Of a stretch of 64,000 nt of DNA, positions 18,908 to 24,865 are shown in pieces. A program made the translations under genes and the position numbers. Location: the NCBI GenBank assembly GCA_907165135.1, contig OU015566.1, forward strand, positions 3,410,001 to 3,474,000, in the 5' to 3' direction. Position 1 is the stretch's first letter, and each line of letters starts with the position of its first letter. The notes under the pieces were generated by a model that was not told the DNA's origin, made no database searches, and saw only the letters and a program-made list of their open reading frames with translations. The DNA is from Oikopleura dioica (taxonomy: Eukaryota > Animalia > Chordata).

Positions 18908-19730
18908 ATGGGAAGTATAAAAAAAGAGCTTTCACCTTGACGTGATGAAATCTCAAAAGTCAATGTGAGATGTTAGCGAAGTTCCTTTAAATTCTGTCAG
19001 CAAAAACAGAGGTGATTTCTTTTTGCCATTTTATCTGATCGTCTCTACAGCAAAATTAAATTGTTTTTGATGATTTTAAATACTTTCGATTAACCGAACA
19101 CCTCCTCAGAGACAGAGGTGGAAAAATTGCCTTTGAAAAAGAAAGAATCCGTAGGGATATTTATCGATGAGCTTTTTTTTGGTTTCTTTTCGAGCAATTT
19201 TCACGAAAATGAACCTACTTTGGGGACATTTTAGCAGATTTTTTCTGGCCAAAATTTTTTCTTGTTTTTGCCGATGAATTATTTCAACCCTTTTCAATTC
19301 AATCCTCATTTTAAATTTCTCCATCCAATCAGGTTTCACCGCTTTTTTTTTTGTTTTTCCGTAATCCGGATATTGACGGCACCCCCCCTCATGGTTTTTA
19401 GGTCTAAGGACAGAAAATCAAAATTAACAAGTTAATTTTTTTGAATCATTTTACTTTCATTTTAGTCAGATTCAGCGTATTCGTAAACCCCGATAATTGG
19501 GTACTTCCCCTTAGGGTACTTATCCTTCCGACGTTTCAAAGGCCAAAAACGTCCTACTTTGATCCTGGAATATGAAGGCATATTTGCCTTTTCACTTATT
19601 TGCTTCGCAAACTCTGATCTTACTCTCGTAAAAAAGACATGTTGAAACAAGTGAGTGTTCAGAGTTTAATAATGACCCTTCATTTTTTGTGAATTTTTTT
19701 CATCTGAGATACCAAAATTGAAACAAAAAA

Positions 19731-22700
19731 ATGGCAAAAACAATAGAGCCTGAAAATGGTCAAGATATTGGCCATCCAAGTCAACTGGAAAGAAAGAAAG
19801 TTGAATCTTGGCTAAAGGAATTTCTTCCGAAACTGAAGAGAACAACTTCGCGGAGTCAGAAATGCCGACTTGTGGAATCAGTTTCGAGAAGCTATTTTGA
19901 AGATGATGGCTGGTGCGTTTGGTGGTACTTTATTATTTTCAGGAAGGACGGCTTTGCAGATGTTTTCTTCAGCCGGCAATGGTCACAAAGGGAATTGAAG
20001 CTGACGACATTCCAAAAAATGCTTCTTGAGAATAACCCTTCCTTTTATGGTGAGACAATAAGTCGATGGGATATCAAAGAAGAAACTGGCGAATGGCAGC
20101 TAGCCGATGATTTGGAGAGTAAGATTATTTCGAAAGGAGGAGAAGCAATCGTTCTTGCTGAGAATTTCGATGGTTTTGAGACCGCGGTGCGAGTCCAGGT
20201 TTTTGATCCCTTTCTTTTTACCGAGGAATTCGGAGCCGAAGAGATTATTTTTGATGTGAATTTTTCTAAAGGTTTAATAAGGTTTTGAGAATTTTTTGCT
20301 CAAGAAATTATTTTTAGATTTTGAGCCAGCAAAAAGCCAGGAATCATCCGAAGACAACGATAAGAAGATCCCATGCCATAAGAATCTGGGCTCGGAAGTC
20401 TGAGTAGAAAACCTAAGTCAGGGCCTGCAAGAGCTAAAATGAAAAGCCGCGTAGCGGCTTTTTTTAAAAACGAAGCCGCAAAGCGGCTTCGCATATTTTA
20501 CCTTCTTAGTGTATTTATTAATTTTGGCGAAGCCGCTCTGCGGCTTCAATTTTAGAAAAAGCCGCTACGCGGCTTTTCATTTTAGCTCTTTCAGACCCTG
20601 ACTCAGGTTTTCTAGTCAGGTTGCCGAGCCCAGATAAGAATGTTATCAAGAACTACGTTAATATTGAATTATTTCACGAAAAAGACGAAGAGAAAGAAGA
20701 CTGTTTGGGATGGATAACCATCATAGAAAAAGGAGAAGTTTCTTTGAGAAGTTTGCTTCAGGAAGAAAAAATTGATTTGGAAGAAAGAAAAATGATTGCG
20801 TACGGAATTTTGGATGGAGATAAATACTTGAATGACAATTGTGGAATTTCGCATTGGGATCAGAAACCGGAAAACTTTCTGATTATTGGCGGAGTACCAA
20901 AGTTCATAGACTTTGGGCTTGTTATGGACGAGACTGGACGAAAAAGCTACCGAAATATGGGTTACGTGAGAAGAGGATCTAAATACAAAGCTTATATTGC
21001 TCTTGGTAAGTCTTTGAACATTTTAATTACCTAAGTACTTTTAAATTTCGAAGCTGCTGGGACGCCAGGATTTACGCATTCTAAACCAACTTCGACTGGA
21101 GGAGGTTATGAAGCTTCAAATTTATATTATTTTCTTTTTGCGACTGGAAAACGTCGTGGACGCTTCTTTATCAGCCGATTAGTGATGAGCAACGCAAAGA
21201 AATCGATGAAATCGCAAAGGTTTTTAAGGACCCCCTTCCCCGTCAGCTTTTTTCGAAAAATTTAGTTTCGAATTTCGAAATTTTGACCCGGGAAATAGAT
21301 TCTGCGGGTTAAAAACGATTTTAGGCTGCATTTTTGAGGGTCTAATCTTGACTCCTTCACCCCCAAATCGCATTTGAAAATTGGACTTTTCGCCGAAAAT
21401 TGACGAATTTCCCTTATTTTGGCAAAACATTGATTTTTATTGGTCCAAAATTCCTCTGACCAAGTTTTTAAAGCAAGTTTAACCTGAGGACGCATGAAAA
21501 ACCAAAAATATGGTGTTTATAAAAATTTCCATTTTTCGAAGGAAAAAGCTGACGGGGGTTCCTTACTGTTTATTTTTTTTATATTTTTAGAATTGTGGCG
21601 CTCATTCAATTACAACTTGGGCAAATGTTTATGATTTCGACGAGCAACGCAATTTATTTTCCGAAATCACGAAAATAATCTCTCTCAAAAATGCGTCTGA
21701 CGATTTTTGCCAGGAAAATCCAAACTTGACTGAGTCCTGTCAAATGTCGATTCTGAGACAAAGCGCGAGCAAATGTGTCGAGCAAGGAATGCAAAACTTG
21801 ACCGAAAACGTCTTTGACCAGAAAAACTCGCAACTTTGCGTGCCAATTTCTGTCACGACACTTCTTCGACACGCAATAAAAAATGATCTTGGCTTCAACG
21901 ATGCGGACTGTTCATACACTTTCGAGAAAATTTTGTCTACTTTGACGATGATTGTTTTTCCACAAAGCATGGCTGGACTCAATTTGAACCCAAACGAGAA
22001 AGAAAAACAATTTCAACAAAATGAAATCGAGATTCTTCTTCAGCGACTTTGCCAGAAAACATATTTAATGGAAAGTGGCTGGGAAAATATAAAAAACCTT
22101 AGCACTCAAAGCTTCAGTCCTCAGATTCACGCATCATCTTGTGAATATCAAGAAGGTAAGGAGAGATTCCTTTTATCAAATTTTGCCAAGTTCAGTAATT
22201 CTTAACGAAAATTTCTCCTTCACTCGCCCCGCAACTGTCACTGGCGCATATTTATTTCCTTCTGGCGAAATTCTTTTCCACCAAATGACGCTCGACCGAG
22301 TTGAAAATGACGAGTACGTTCTCCAAAACACCGACTTCAAGGACCACTCTCCAGGTAGGTTCTCTATTTATCGAAAATTAATTTAAGGACCCCCCGTGAG
22401 CTTTTATGTCCGAAAAGGGAATTTTTTAAAAACACCATATTTTTGATTCTTAACGCGTCCTCAGGTTAAACTTGCTTCAAAATCTTGATGAGAGAAAGTT
22501 TTGACCAAGATAATTCAATACATTTGCCAAAATTTGGGGAAATTCGTCAATTTTTGGCGAATAGTCTAATTTTCAAATGCGATTTTGGGGGTGAAGGAGT
22601 CGAGATAGACCCCCAAAAAATGCAGCCTAAAATCGTTTTTTGGCCTGTAGAATTCAATTCCGGGGTCAAAATTTTAAAATTCCGAAATTTGATTTTTCGA

Positions 22701-22942
22701 AAAAAGCTGACGGTGAGGTCCATAAAAAAATTATAGCTCTGCGAATCCCCCTGAAAAACCCTTACTACGAGAAGTTTGACTTCGTGCGGTTCTATTTTGA
22801 CAATGACACCAGAACTGCAGAGTTCGAAGAAGACGGGATGAAAATAAAGGTCGTCAACGAGCATCCATCTATCGACAATATGGAAGCCAACACTTGGTAT
22901 TTGATGCCCACTGCTTTTACTCTTAAACTGGCGAAAATTTGA
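19731..22942 (+). CDS. Atypical protein kinase fused to a papain-like (clan CA) cysteine-peptidase-like domain
   Basis: Kinase motifs SKGGEAIV, TAVRVQ (beta3 Lys replaced by Arg), HWDQKPEN, IDFG and AAGTPGF. C-terminal DQKNSQLCVPIS and FHQMTLDRVENDEYVLQNT. Exonic MITE at 20386-20633; one T missing at 21135-39. Confidence 0.75.
20386..20633. mobile_element. hAT-like MITE, copy 2, inserted in a kinase exon
   Basis: 8-bp TSD ATAAGAAT (20378-85 and 20634-41). TIR of about 40 bp, CTGGGCTCGG(A/C)A... Excision restores ...IPCHKNVIKNY. Confidence 0.92.
21227..21563. mobile_element. Intronic MITE, TA-flanked; same family as 22386-22722 in opposite orientation
   Basis: TIR AGGACCCCC..CGTCAGCTTTTT. 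The internal sequence matches the reverse complement of 22386-22722. Confidence 0.75.
22386..22722. mobile_element. Intronic MITE, second copy
   Basis: Reverse-complement homolog of 21227-21563, within the last kinase intron. Confidence 0.75.
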
Positions 22943-23004
22943 ATCGCACAAACATGTTTATTCTTGATTGAATTTGTACAGGAGAAAAAAGAGTTAAAGC
23001 CAGT

Positions 23005-24370
23005 TCAGTTGGAAGACAAGGAGGAAAGCTGGTTCTTGATAACATCGTTCATCAAGTAATTTGGGTCTGTTGATTTTTCCACAATGTCTAAAAAGAATCA
23101 TTCTTTTCTTGAAAAAAAAATTTTCTTACTGAAATGATCGGTATTTTCGAATTCAATGAAATCGCATCGAACTCCAGTTGCATTCAGCATTTCGTAAAAG
23201 CTTAAAAATGAAAGAGAAAGCCAAAGTAAAAGATTACCGAAGAGACTGATCGTGGAAAGCTGGAGAGTCATTTTCAGCGATGCAGATAATGAAACGAGTC
23301 GATTGTCTTGAATTCGCGTAGATTTTCTTGAAGTTAGTCGGGTCCATTGGAGACATGGCTTCGGCGTCGTCGATGGTGAGTTTCAAGGCATTATTGACGG
23401 AAGTTTCCACAATCGGCCTAAATTTATTTTAAGGAAAAATTGGCCCCTTTTTTCACCTCAAATCGAAAATCCCCGAAACAGCATAAATCGTCACGGGCAG
23501 CAAGCTTGGAAAATCGTGCGAATGCTGCGCCAAAACCATCGTCGCCAAATGAGCACCAGCCGAGTGTCCCATAATGTGAATTCCGACAGTGTAAGGAAAT
23601 TTGTGGCGAATGAATTGAAATGCTGCTTGCACTTGAGCGACGATTTCAGACATTGAAACACTGAAAAGGATGAGTTTGTTGCGCAAGGAGGTTAAATAAG
23701 GAGAGGGCGAGGGAGGGTTTTATTTTTAGGGGATGACACGAGAGAAGAATTAGCAGCGAGTTAAAAAATATTCCACTGTTGAAAATAAGCAAAAAGGACT
23801 TTCCTCTGAAAATTAACAAATTGATATCCTTATTTTTGGTAAAAAAATTTTCAAATTCTTCCGAAAATTCCCGAAAAACTAATTTTTTTTTTGAAAAAAT
23901 CCATTTTTATGGCTTTATTTGCAATTTTAAGGGTGTCACTCTGTAAATTTCACGAAAACATCTCATTGAAATCTCACCTCGGACAGAGATCATAACCAAT
24001 TCCGACATAAATTGCGCCCATTTTCGTCACCGATTCTGCTGCATGTCCCGAAACATCTCTACTGCACTCTTGCCAGTAACCACCGTGGATGTAGACAAAA
24101 ACTGGCGTTCCTTTCGTCACTTCTTCTGGCTTGTAGATGTCTAGCAGACAGTTCGGGCCGAGATCACTGTATTTCACTCCGGTTTCGCAGTTGATGCTGC
24201 TCCGCGCGTTTTTCGTCGCAGAAACCATCTTTTGAAAAAAAGTATTTTGGAGAAGGGGTTGAAAAGGACTTACGGTTTCCACATGATTTCCCACAATTGT
24301 TTCGGGTGTCAGGCGAGTCGCCCATTGTGACGGCGAGTACTGCTTGTCCAAATTTGCGGAGTCATCGAGC
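23005..24370 (-). CDS. AFMID: Kynurenine formamidase (arylformamidase), alpha/beta hydrolase; 5' end uncertain
   Basis: LDKQYSPSQW, VFVYIHGGYWQ, GYDLCP, the nucleophile motif GHSAGAHL, VSGIFDLRP and AENDSPAFHDQS. Confidence 0.88.
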
Positions 24371-24865
24371 GACTGCGATTTGTGCCTAAAAGAGGGTTGA
24401 TGAAAATTTTTTTTCCAAGGAAAATCTTCTTCAAAAATCCTTTTTATGTTCATTTCAAACCTTGATCTTGCGATTCCTCTGGGAGAGCTTACAGTCATTC
24501 TGACTTTGACAGCCTTTGTATCTTATTTTTTCTTGACTTTTCCCTTTTTTCTGTTGATAATAAAAAATATCAGCGATCTCGAAATCTGCACTCGCCACTG
24601 GCGAGTCGCCAGAGAAAAAAAAATGATAAGCACGGATTTGGTAGCTTTGAATGAAAAAGTGACACCTTGGGACTCGAAAACACGCGCCTCAAAAAACGCG
24701 TTTCATAGAAACAGAGAGACCATTCGTCACACCACCCCACTGCGATGCAGCATGTTAATCACTTTCCATACAAAGAAAATGTGACTCAAGGAACCTTTGA
24801 AATAGAATTCGTAGAAAAAAAAACGAAAATCAAAAATTTGAGCAGATTCGTGGCGATTTGCTCTC

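What the first reader, a model, noticed from the sequence alone, without database searches (positions are those of the whole stretch)
19731..22942. Kinase fused to a papain-like Cys-His-Asn domain
Seen: after the kinase C-lobe come Q-x5-C (DQKNSQLCVPIS, Cys codon 21837-39) and H-x15-N (HQMTLDRVENDEYVLQN, codons 22279 and 22327). The kinase keeps HxDxKPEN and DFG but has Arg in place of the beta3 Lys. Established: papain has Q19-x5-C25, H159 and N175, the same spacings. Inference: a kinase or pseudokinase-protease fusion that I do not recognise from known families; it could be an autoprocessing or defence-type signalling protein.
Basis: partly seen in the sequence, partly recalled or inferred. 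Interest (0 to 1): 0.76.

Follow-up and report, generated by a model that had tools for sequence, protein, structure and literature searches.

The report
Kinase fused to papain-fold protease
This Oikopleura dioica gene joins an unusual protein kinase to a very divergent papain-type cysteine protease domain; it belongs to a large, unstudied, Oikopleura-only gene family, but this copy has a frame shift as assembled.

Summary
The window lies on Oikopleura dioica OKI2018_I69 chr1. Positions 19731-22942 (+) hold a six-exon gene with GT-AG introns, collinear with ~700-aa O. dioica proteins.

- **Kinase part (exons 1-3):** a divergent eukaryotic-type kinase. It has Arg at the beta3 Lys position, and keeps the HxDxKxxN loop and DFG.
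- **C-terminal part (exons 4-6):** a ~230-aa domain with no Pfam or PDB sequence match.
  - An AlphaFold model of a paralogue places the conserved Cys at the N-terminus of a helix, followed by a beta sheet.
  - All 50 best structural neighbours are papain-like peptidases (C1, C39, staphopain; Z up to 9.9).
  - Cys is the most conserved column of the domain (81/83). Gln (80/83) and His (36/40) are also conserved; Asn less so (35/49).
- **One chain, not two genes:** some paralogues carry kinase and protease in a single uninterrupted ORF.
- **Family:** at least 100 loci in this genome. Outside O. dioica I found only unnamed marine-metagenome fragments.

Caveats:
- This copy has a one-base frame shift in exon 3. 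It could be a pseudogene or an assembly error.
- No RNA evidence was obtained for this copy.
- Triad geometry and enzyme activity are untested.

The scan reported this family before on other DNA of this genome (s1-400277, s1-409161).

The parts
19731..20271 (+). Exon 1: N-terminal region, glycine-rich loop (SKGGEA from 20130) and beta3 strand with Arg (codon 20190) in place of the invariant Lys. An alternative donor 10 nt downstream (exon end 20281) is also in frame.
20616..21005 (+). Exon 2: kinase hinge, catalytic loop HWDQKPEN (from 20852), DFG (20909) and start of the activation segment. The only Pfam Pkinase match in the window (35 bits, cut-off 31.7).
21054..21219 (+). Exon 3: AGTPGF and the CDWKTSW (alphaF) part of the kinase C-lobe. 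It is read in two different frames.
21135..21139 (+). T-run where the reading frame shifts. It is one base short relative to paralogue L002. As assembled, translation would stop about 29 codons into exon 4.
   Evidence: reading
21591..22155 (+). Exon 4: end of the kinase C-lobe and linker, then the helical lobe of the papain-fold domain. Holds Gln (21819) and the nucleophile Cys (21837) in DQKNSQLCVPIS, the conserved loop FPQSMAGLNLNP, and the GW motif.
22196..22354 (+). Exon 5: beta hairpin of the papain-fold domain, with His (22279) and Asn (22327).
22737..22942 (+). Exon 6: the variable last beta strands of the domain, and the stop codon.
20384..20635 (.). Hairpin (MITE-like) repeat filling intron 1, with 109-nt arms 90% complementary. 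Its right arm reaches the acceptor and the first bases of exon 2.
21237..21546 (-). Copy of a ~310-bp repeat in intron 3, inverted relative to the copy in intron 5.
22402..22716 (+). Second copy of the same repeat, in intron 5. The two copies bracket exons 4-5, which encode Cys and His.

Best explanation
The locus is one member of an Oikopleura-restricted gene family with at least 100 loci in this genome. Family proteins are about 700 aa and have three parts:

- a family-specific N-terminal region;
- a very divergent eukaryotic-type protein kinase domain;
- a C-terminal papain-fold (clan CA, canonical papain/C39-like) domain.

I take the papain-fold domain to be an active thiol hydrolase, most likely a peptidase or isopeptidase. 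In this reading the Cys at the helix N-terminus is the nucleophile, His on the next-lobe beta strand is the base, Asn 16 residues on orients the His, and Gln six residues before the Cys forms the oxyanion hole.

The kinase domain has an invariant catalytic Asp, Lys, Asn and DFG, but Arg instead of the beta3 Lys and no modelled alphaC helix. I take it to bind nucleotide. It may phosphorylate, or it may act as an ATP-dependent switch or docking module for the protease, as nucleotide binding gates the C-terminal RNase in IRE1 and RNase L.

What is shown: the gene structure, the fusion in one chain, the fold class and the conservation. What is inferred: catalysis, the coupling of the two domains, and any cellular role.

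As assembled, this copy has a one-base frame shift in exon 3. That would prevent translation of the protease part unless it is an assembly error.
For: **Species and assembly**
- All named database relatives are O. dioica proteins.
- A cluster member is an OKI2018_I69 chr1 gene model on a contig of the same length as the window's contig.

**Gene model**
- Collinear tblastn of P0004 and P0012 over six exons, with GT-AG introns.

**Fusion in one chain**
- Single ORFs in L021 (655 aa) and L022 (669 aa) hold the N-terminal region, the kinase and the Cys motif.
- A single ORF in L026 (404 aa) holds the kinase C-lobe and the whole papain-fold domain.

**Fold**
- AF2 domain model: pLDDT above 90 over most of residues 78-302 (one conserved loop near 124-130 is below 50), Cys80 as the first residue of helix 80-95, beta lobe 178-301.
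- VIA search of 48,161 chains: 19 hits with Z >= 8. All 50 listed are papain-like: xylellain 9.9, Der f 1 9.8, cathepsin B 9.6, PCAT1 9.4, ComA 9.3.
- The Foldseek and Atlas lists are enriched for the same fold.
- Weak Peptidase_C1_2 sequence signal over the Cys helix in 5 of 89 members.

**Conservation**
- Cys 81/83 (the other two are Ser), the top column of the domain. Gln 80/83, His 36/40, Asn 35/49.
- His is kept in 28 of 30 genomic loci.

**Kinase**
- Pkinase hits above threshold.
- Catalytic Asp, Lys and Asn 31/31; DFG 30/30; beta3 Arg 25/26.
- Generic eukaryotic protein kinase structural matches at E ~3e-6.
- Full-length model pTM 0.82.
Against: - No coordinates were available, so I did not measure whether Cys, His and Asn converge.
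- Gln lies in a segment with pLDDT below 50 in both models.
- Asn is only about 71% conserved.
- Foldseek gave no match at E <= 1e-3. Z ~10 is only moderately above the 7-8 that unmatched models typically reach (note).
- High conservation in a young, species-restricted family partly reflects shared ancestry.
- The kinase lacks the beta3 Lys, and in the model an alphaC helix. These are features of pseudokinases.
- This copy has a frame shift. No RNA read of 95% identity or more lay on it.
- There are no experimental data on any member.
Confidence: 0.6

Rival explanations
1. This particular copy is a decaying pseudogene of the family. The exon-3 frame shift is real, so the locus cannot make the fusion protein. 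At most it makes a truncated kinase fragment. This rival concerns the locus only and is compatible with the family-level reading.
For: - The frame switch shows in two independent protein-to-DNA alignments and against paralogue DNA.
- The closest paralogue, L002, also has a stop in exon 4.
- No reads of 95% identity or more lay on the locus.
- Three introns are filled with repeats.
Against: - The defect is a single base in a homopolymer, in a Nanopore-based assembly. Short-read polishing can fail in multi-copy families.
- Every other exon is open, all splice sites are canonical and all catalytic residues are intact.
- The RNA runs come from a diverged lineage and are uninformative.
Confidence: 0.4
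2. The papain-fold domain is catalytic but is not a protease. It would use the Cys-His pair for another reaction known in this superfamily: acyl or acetyl transfer, transglutamination, deamidation or amidase activity.
For: - The superfamily includes many such enzymes (PMC10318531).
- The neighbours at Z 7.5-8.8 include a pseudomurein isopeptidase, a lyase, phytochelatin synthase and a CdiA toxin.
- No known peptidase sequence family is matched.
Against: - The best-scoring neighbours are true peptidases of families C1, C39 and C47.
- The family keeps a Gln six residues before Cys. According to PMC10318531, transglutaminase and acetyltransferase clusters mostly lack this canonical oxyanion residue.
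Confidence: 0.15
3. Both domains are non-catalytic: a pseudokinase plus a pseudoprotease that serve only as binding scaffolds. The conserved residues would be structural or ligand-binding.
For: - Arg replaces the beta3 Lys in 25/26 members, and the model lacks alphaC.
- Some members have Ser, Tyr or Thr at triad positions.
- Inactive papain-fold domains are common.
Against: - Cys is the single most conserved column of the domain.
- The kinase Asp, Lys, Asn and DFG are invariant across paralogues of 30-50% identity. That is more than scaffolding usually requires.
- In P0045 all three triad residues are lost together, as expected if they work as a unit.
Confidence: 0.12
4. The kinase exons and the protease exons are two adjacent genes that only look fused.
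For: - Exons 3 and 4 are separated by a 371-nt repeat-filled intron.
- No splice junction reads were obtained.
Against: - Uninterrupted ORFs span both parts in L021, L022 and L026.
- Database gene models from another O. dioica assembly have the same architecture.
- The phases of all exons fit.
Confidence: 0.03

Closest known systems
Canonical papain-like cysteine peptidases (clan CA, 'cluster I' of PMC10318531): C1 papain/cathepsin B/xylellain, C39 bacteriocin-processing peptidase domains (ComA, PCAT1), C47 staphopain
   Same: - Helix with the Cys at its N-terminus, followed by an antiparallel beta sheet.
- Best structural matches: Z 9.9-8.0, 124-163 aligned residues.
- Gln-x5-Cys and His-x15-Asn/Asp spacings. 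The spacings quoted for papain and ComA are from my memory.
   Different: - No sequence match to any Pfam peptidase family or PDB chain.
- About 80 residues of extra helices lie between the Cys helix and the sheet.
- The window's copy has no signal peptide or propeptide.
- The domain is fused behind a kinase and is restricted to Oikopleura.
EDR1/CTR1-type kinases with an EDR1 domain (PF14381)
   Same: A papain-fold domain and a protein kinase domain in one polypeptide. This is the only such fusion I found described (PMC10318531).
   Different: - PF14381 is not matched here.
- The paper places EDR1 with the C71/C93-like transglutaminase cluster, which mostly lacks the oxyanion residue.
- From my memory, domain order is reversed (EDR1 domain N-terminal) and these are plant MAPKKKs.
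KSR1/2 and other Lys-to-Arg kinases or pseudokinases (from established knowledge)
   Same: Arg at the beta3 'VAIK' position, with the catalytic loop and DFG retained.
   Different: No sequence relationship was shown. Here the model also lacks alphaC, and the domain is followed by a hydrolase domain.
IRE1 and RNase L (kinase or pseudokinase followed by a C-terminal hydrolase domain)
   Same: An analogy of function only. In those proteins a nucleotide-binding kinase-fold domain sits N-terminal to an effector hydrolase and gates it. IRE1 appears among the kinase-domain Foldseek hits.
   Different: Their effector is an RNase (KEN) domain, not a papain fold. Gating is purely an inference for this family.

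Membership tests
Papain-like fold (clan CA / SCOP d.3) | Core alpha-helix with the catalytic Cys at its very N-terminus (PMC10318531) | tested here: met
   In the AF2 model of paralogue P0003:396-697, Cys80 is the first residue of helix 80-95, with pLDDT above 90. The window's Cys (21837) aligns to that column.
Papain-like fold (clan CA / SCOP d.3) | Antiparallel beta sheet after the helix; overall structural similarity to solved members | tested here: met
   Strands 178-301. All 50 top VIA hits are papain-like, with Z up to 9.9 and 154 aligned residues. Foldseek gave only weak hits, E >= 0.018.
Papain-like fold (clan CA / SCOP d.3) | His on one strand and a polar residue on the next, converging on the Cys | tested here: inconclusive
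   His213 lies in strand 210-221 and Asn229 at the end of strand 224-228. Order and spacing fit. Distances could not be measured because no coordinates are returned.
Papain-like fold (clan CA / SCOP d.3) | Oxyanion-hole Gln shortly before the Cys (canonical cluster) | tested here: inconclusive
   Gln-x5-Cys is present and 96% conserved. The residue sits in a segment with pLDDT below 50 in both models.
Pfam peptidase families C1 (PF00112/PF03051) and C39 (PF03412/PF13529) | Sequence match at or above the gathering score | tested here: not met
   No family for the window exons or for L026. Only sub-threshold Peptidase_C1_2 hits in 5 of 89 members; the best E-value was 0.0036, and the one hit inspected (P0036) scored 12.4 bits against a cut-off of 22.
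EDR1 domain (PF14381) | Sequence match to PF14381 | tested here: not met
   Absent from all Pfam scans.
Eukaryotic protein kinase (Pkinase PF00069) | Profile match above the gathering score | tested here: met
   Exon 2 scores 35 bits (cut-off 31.7). L021 scores 44.8 bits. Only profile positions ~74-155 are matched. Structural hits to ERK2, DAPK1 and GSK3 at E ~3e-6.
Eukaryotic protein kinase (Pkinase PF00069) | Catalytic loop Asp/Lys/Asn and the DFG Asp | tested here: met
   HWDQKPEN and DFG are in the window. Family-wide they are invariant, 31/31 and 30/30.
Eukaryotic protein kinase (Pkinase PF00069) | Beta3 Lys (VAIK) paired with an alphaC Glu | tested here: not met
   Arg in the window (codon 20190) and in 25/26 members. 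The full-length model shows no long helix between beta3 and beta4.

The most novel reading that the evidence does not exclude
The family is a chordate-lineage invention. In this reading, a single-chain switch couples nucleotide binding or phosphorylation by an atypical kinase to a papain-fold protease. The switch has diversified into more than 100 paralogues, many near contig ends. They would act as sensors or effectors in innate immunity, or in intragenomic or reproductive conflict.
Probability: 0.15. Interest if true: 0.8.

Novelty: new variant of a known kind. Interest (0 to 1): 0.55.

Why it matters
If the protease and kinase parts are both active, this would be a previously undescribed type of bifunctional signalling enzyme. 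It is also one of the largest lineage-specific gene families in the very compact genome of a close invertebrate relative of vertebrates.

It adds a sequence family to the papain-like superfamily that profile methods do not detect. It also offers a natural system for asking how a kinase fold can control a protease in one chain. The many diverged paralogues with variable C-terminal strands suggest that target recognition is diversifying, which is testable.

Tried and rejected
**RNA evidence.** I laid four O. dioica RNA runs on 19600-23100. Only short patches at 90-95% identity matched, and even the neighbouring gene's end (22993-23100) matched at only 90-95%. The runs are therefore from a diverged lineage, and the patches come from paralogues. 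This gave no splice or expression evidence for this copy.

**Sequence searches for known relatives.**
- Pfam on the exons, on paralogues and on 89 family members: nothing above threshold for the C-terminal domain.
- PDB by sequence and by profile: nothing.
- HMMER search of 1.84 billion representatives with exon 4: 63 hits. The ten whose sources I checked were O. dioica or unnamed metagenome fragments.
- Profile word search: 241 hits, of the same origin.
- Pattern scans of viral contigs and of bacterial and archaeal genomes: no relatives.

**Other scans.**
- Rfam on the window: nothing.
- ESM-Atlas by features: papain-family clusters at 0.85-0.89, leads only; the first hit, a fucose isomerase cluster, is probably chance.

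**Literature.** I found no paper on this family.

**Rejected ideas.**
- Secreted C1-type protease: the window's copy has no signal peptide.
- A tiny intron rescuing exon 3: there are no usable splice sites.
- A viral or transposon gene: none was found in the viral contigs, and the copies have ordinary introns.
Full report
**What is in the sequence**

The region is eukaryotic and split by introns. No single ORF spans 19731-22942.

Reading the DNA and aligning full-length relatives to it gives six exons on the + strand:

| Exon | Coordinates |
|---|---|
| 1 | 19731-20271 |
| 2 | 20616-21005 |
| 3 | 21054-21219 |
| 4 | 21591-22155 |
| 5 | 22196-22354 |
| 6 | 22737-22942 |

All introns are GT-AG and all phases fit.

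- Gln 21819
- Cys 21837
- His 22279
- Asn 22327
- beta3 Arg 20190
- HWDQKPEN from 20852
- DFG 20909

One thing was missed. Inside exon 3 the frame changes at the T-run 21135-21139. AAGTPGF...NLYYFLF is in one frame and CDWKTSWTLLYQPISDEQRKEIDEIAK in another. The run is one base short compared with the closest paralogue L002. As assembled, translation would stop about 29 codons into exon 4.

**Organism**

All named database relatives are Oikopleura dioica proteins.

One cluster member is gene model OKI2018_I69.chr1.g3529, on a contig of 14,533,022 bases. That is exactly the length of the window's contig C4.

The genome is 64,281,565 bases in 19 contigs. This fits the published Nanopore-plus-Illumina assembly of 64.3 Mbp in 19 scaffolds (PMC8008620).

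**One gene, not two**

Database models from another O. dioica assembly (P0003, P0004, P0005, P0007, P0012, P0013; 692-707 aa) have the same order: N-terminal region, kinase, C-terminal domain.

Independently of any gene prediction, some paralogues in this genome carry the parts in one uninterrupted ORF:
- L021 (655 aa) and L022 (669 aa) run from the N-terminus through the kinase to past the Cys motif.
- L026 (404 aa) runs from the kinase C-lobe to the natural stop, through the Cys and His motifs.

**The C-terminal domain**

It has no Pfam family. It has no PDB relative by sequence or by profile.

I modelled P0003:396-697 with AlphaFold, using an 89-row family alignment that included the window's exons 4-6 by reference. 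Findings:
- pLDDT is above 90 over most of residues 78-302; one conserved loop near 124-130 is below 50.
- The conserved Cys is the first residue of helix 80-95.
- A helical lobe follows.
- Then comes a beta lobe, residues 178-301.

Structural searches with this model:
- **VIA-align, 48,161 PDB representatives.** There were 19 chains with Z >= 8. The best were xylellain 9.9 (154 aligned), Der f 1 9.8, cathepsin B 9.6, PCAT1 9.4 and ComA 9.3. Staphopain, UfSP, ATG4 and ZUFSP came lower. All 50 listed chains are papain-like.
- **Foldseek.** No hit at E <= 1e-3. The top of the list was still dominated by the same superfamily.
- **ESM-Atlas shape search.** It returned Peptidase_C1 and C39_2 clusters.

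The starts of the aligned ranges put model Gln74/Cys80 on cathepsin B 23/29 and on ComA 11/17. From memory, those are the oxyanion Gln and the catalytic Cys of those enzymes.

His213 lies in strand 210-221, and Asn229 lies at the end of the next strand. This is the arrangement that defines the superfamily (PMC10318531).

A faint sequence signal also exists. Five of 89 members touch Peptidase_C1_2 below threshold. In P0036 the matched stretch covers the Cys.

**Conservation of the C-terminal domain**

In the family alignment:

| Residue | Conservation | Note |
|---|---|---|
| Cys | 81/83 | most conserved column; the other two are Ser |
| Gln | 80/83 | |
| His | 36/40 | |
| Asn | 35/49 | weaker |

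Across 30 genomic loci, His is kept in 28. P0045 has lost Cys, His and Asn together, as expected of residues that work as a unit.

A loop, YPRSLAGLNLNP, is almost invariant in sequence but has low confidence in both models. I cannot explain it.

**The kinase**

Exon 2 and the paralogues pass the Pkinase threshold, but only over the catalytic core.

The full-length model has pLDDT 82.4 and pTM 0.82. It matches ordinary eukaryotic kinases only at E ~3e-6. It shows no long helix where alphaC should be.

Conservation family-wide:
- catalytic Asp, Lys and Asn: 31/31
- DFG: 30/30
- GG-E-A loop: invariant
- beta3 position: Arg in 25/26

So the domain lacks two hallmarks of active kinases, yet its phosphate- and metal-binding residues are under strict constraint. 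I read it as nucleotide-binding, with its catalytic competence open.

**The family**

Exon 4 finds 132 matches in this genome, and 118 of them have no internal stop. They lie on four large contigs. Dense groups sit near contig ends: C1 at 16.1-16.6 Mb of 17.09 Mb, and C2 at 11.6-12.7 Mb of 12.96 Mb.

Searches outside the genome:
- 1.84 billion representatives: 63 hits.
- Profile word search: 241 hits.
- The named hits are all O. dioica; the rest are unnamed short ENA or JGI contigs.
- Viral, bacterial and archaeal collections: none.
- No paper describes the family.

The only kinase/papain-fold fusion I found in the literature is the EDR1 domain (PMC10318531). It belongs to a different cluster of the superfamily and is not matched here.

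Two earlier notes of this scan reported the same family elsewhere in this genome. They are unchecked AI notes that agree with what I found independently.

**Mechanism**

My best reading has two parts.
- **Protease.** A Cys-His-Asn thiol hydrolase with a Gln oxyanion hole, most likely a peptidase or isopeptidase.
- **Kinase.** An atypical ATP-binding kinase fold in the same chain. It either phosphorylates, or it gates or docks the protease, in the manner of IRE1 or RNase L.

The variable last strands fit diversifying target recognition. Exon 6 is only 25-50% identical among paralogues, against 50-65% for exons 4-5.

Catalysis, the coupling of the two domains and the cellular role are all inferences.

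**Limits**

- No coordinates are returned by the fold tool, so triad distances were not measured.
- RNA runs of the species label were from a diverged lineage. All reads were 90-95% alike, even on the neighbouring gene, so they gave no evidence on this copy.
- Exons were searched by reference, and whole-protein work used database paralogues and single-ORF paralogues.

Noticed in passing
window 21237-21546 and 22402-22716: Two copies of a ~310-bp repeat lie in opposite orientation in introns 3 and 5 (arms 57-118 nt, 71-88% complementary). They bracket exons 4-5. Such pairs can favour exon skipping or back-splicing. This was not tested.
   Followed up: partly
window 20384-20635: A hairpin MITE-like element (109-nt arms, 90% complementary) fills intron 1. 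Its right arm supplies the splice acceptor and the first bases of exon 2.
   Followed up: partly
window 23453-24498 (- strand): ORFs with HGGYW and GHSAGAHL motifs, typical of an alpha/beta-hydrolase (esterase or formamidase type), form the next gene downstream. I identified it by eye only.
   Followed up: no
window 22993-23100: RNA reads cover this stretch at depth ~10-17, but at only 90-95% identity with fixed differences. It appears to be a neighbouring transcript's end. The public RNA runs labelled with this species therefore come from a diverged lineage.
   Followed up: partly
L022 and L023 (G000:C4:3228036-3234479 and 3282852-3289256): Two near-identical paralogues with Ser in place of the catalytic Cys. 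Each is followed by the same EGF-like, Thr-rich (mucin-like) ORF. This looks like a recent segmental duplication about 125-180 kb upstream of the window.
   Followed up: no
L030:3796-4422 (- strand): A 209-aa ORF with a GIY-YIG-like motif sits inside a paralogue locus. It may be a Penelope-like element inserted in an intron.
   Followed up: no
P0003 residues 516-534; window ~21951-22010: The loop YPRSLAGLNLNP..E...Q is among the most conserved stretches of the family. Both AlphaFold models predict it with pLDDT below 50. I have no explanation for it.
   Followed up: no
G000 contigs C1, C2, C5: Many family members are grouped near contig ends, for example C1 at 16.1-16.6 of 17.09 Mb and C2 at 11.6-12.7 of 12.96 Mb.
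   Followed up: no
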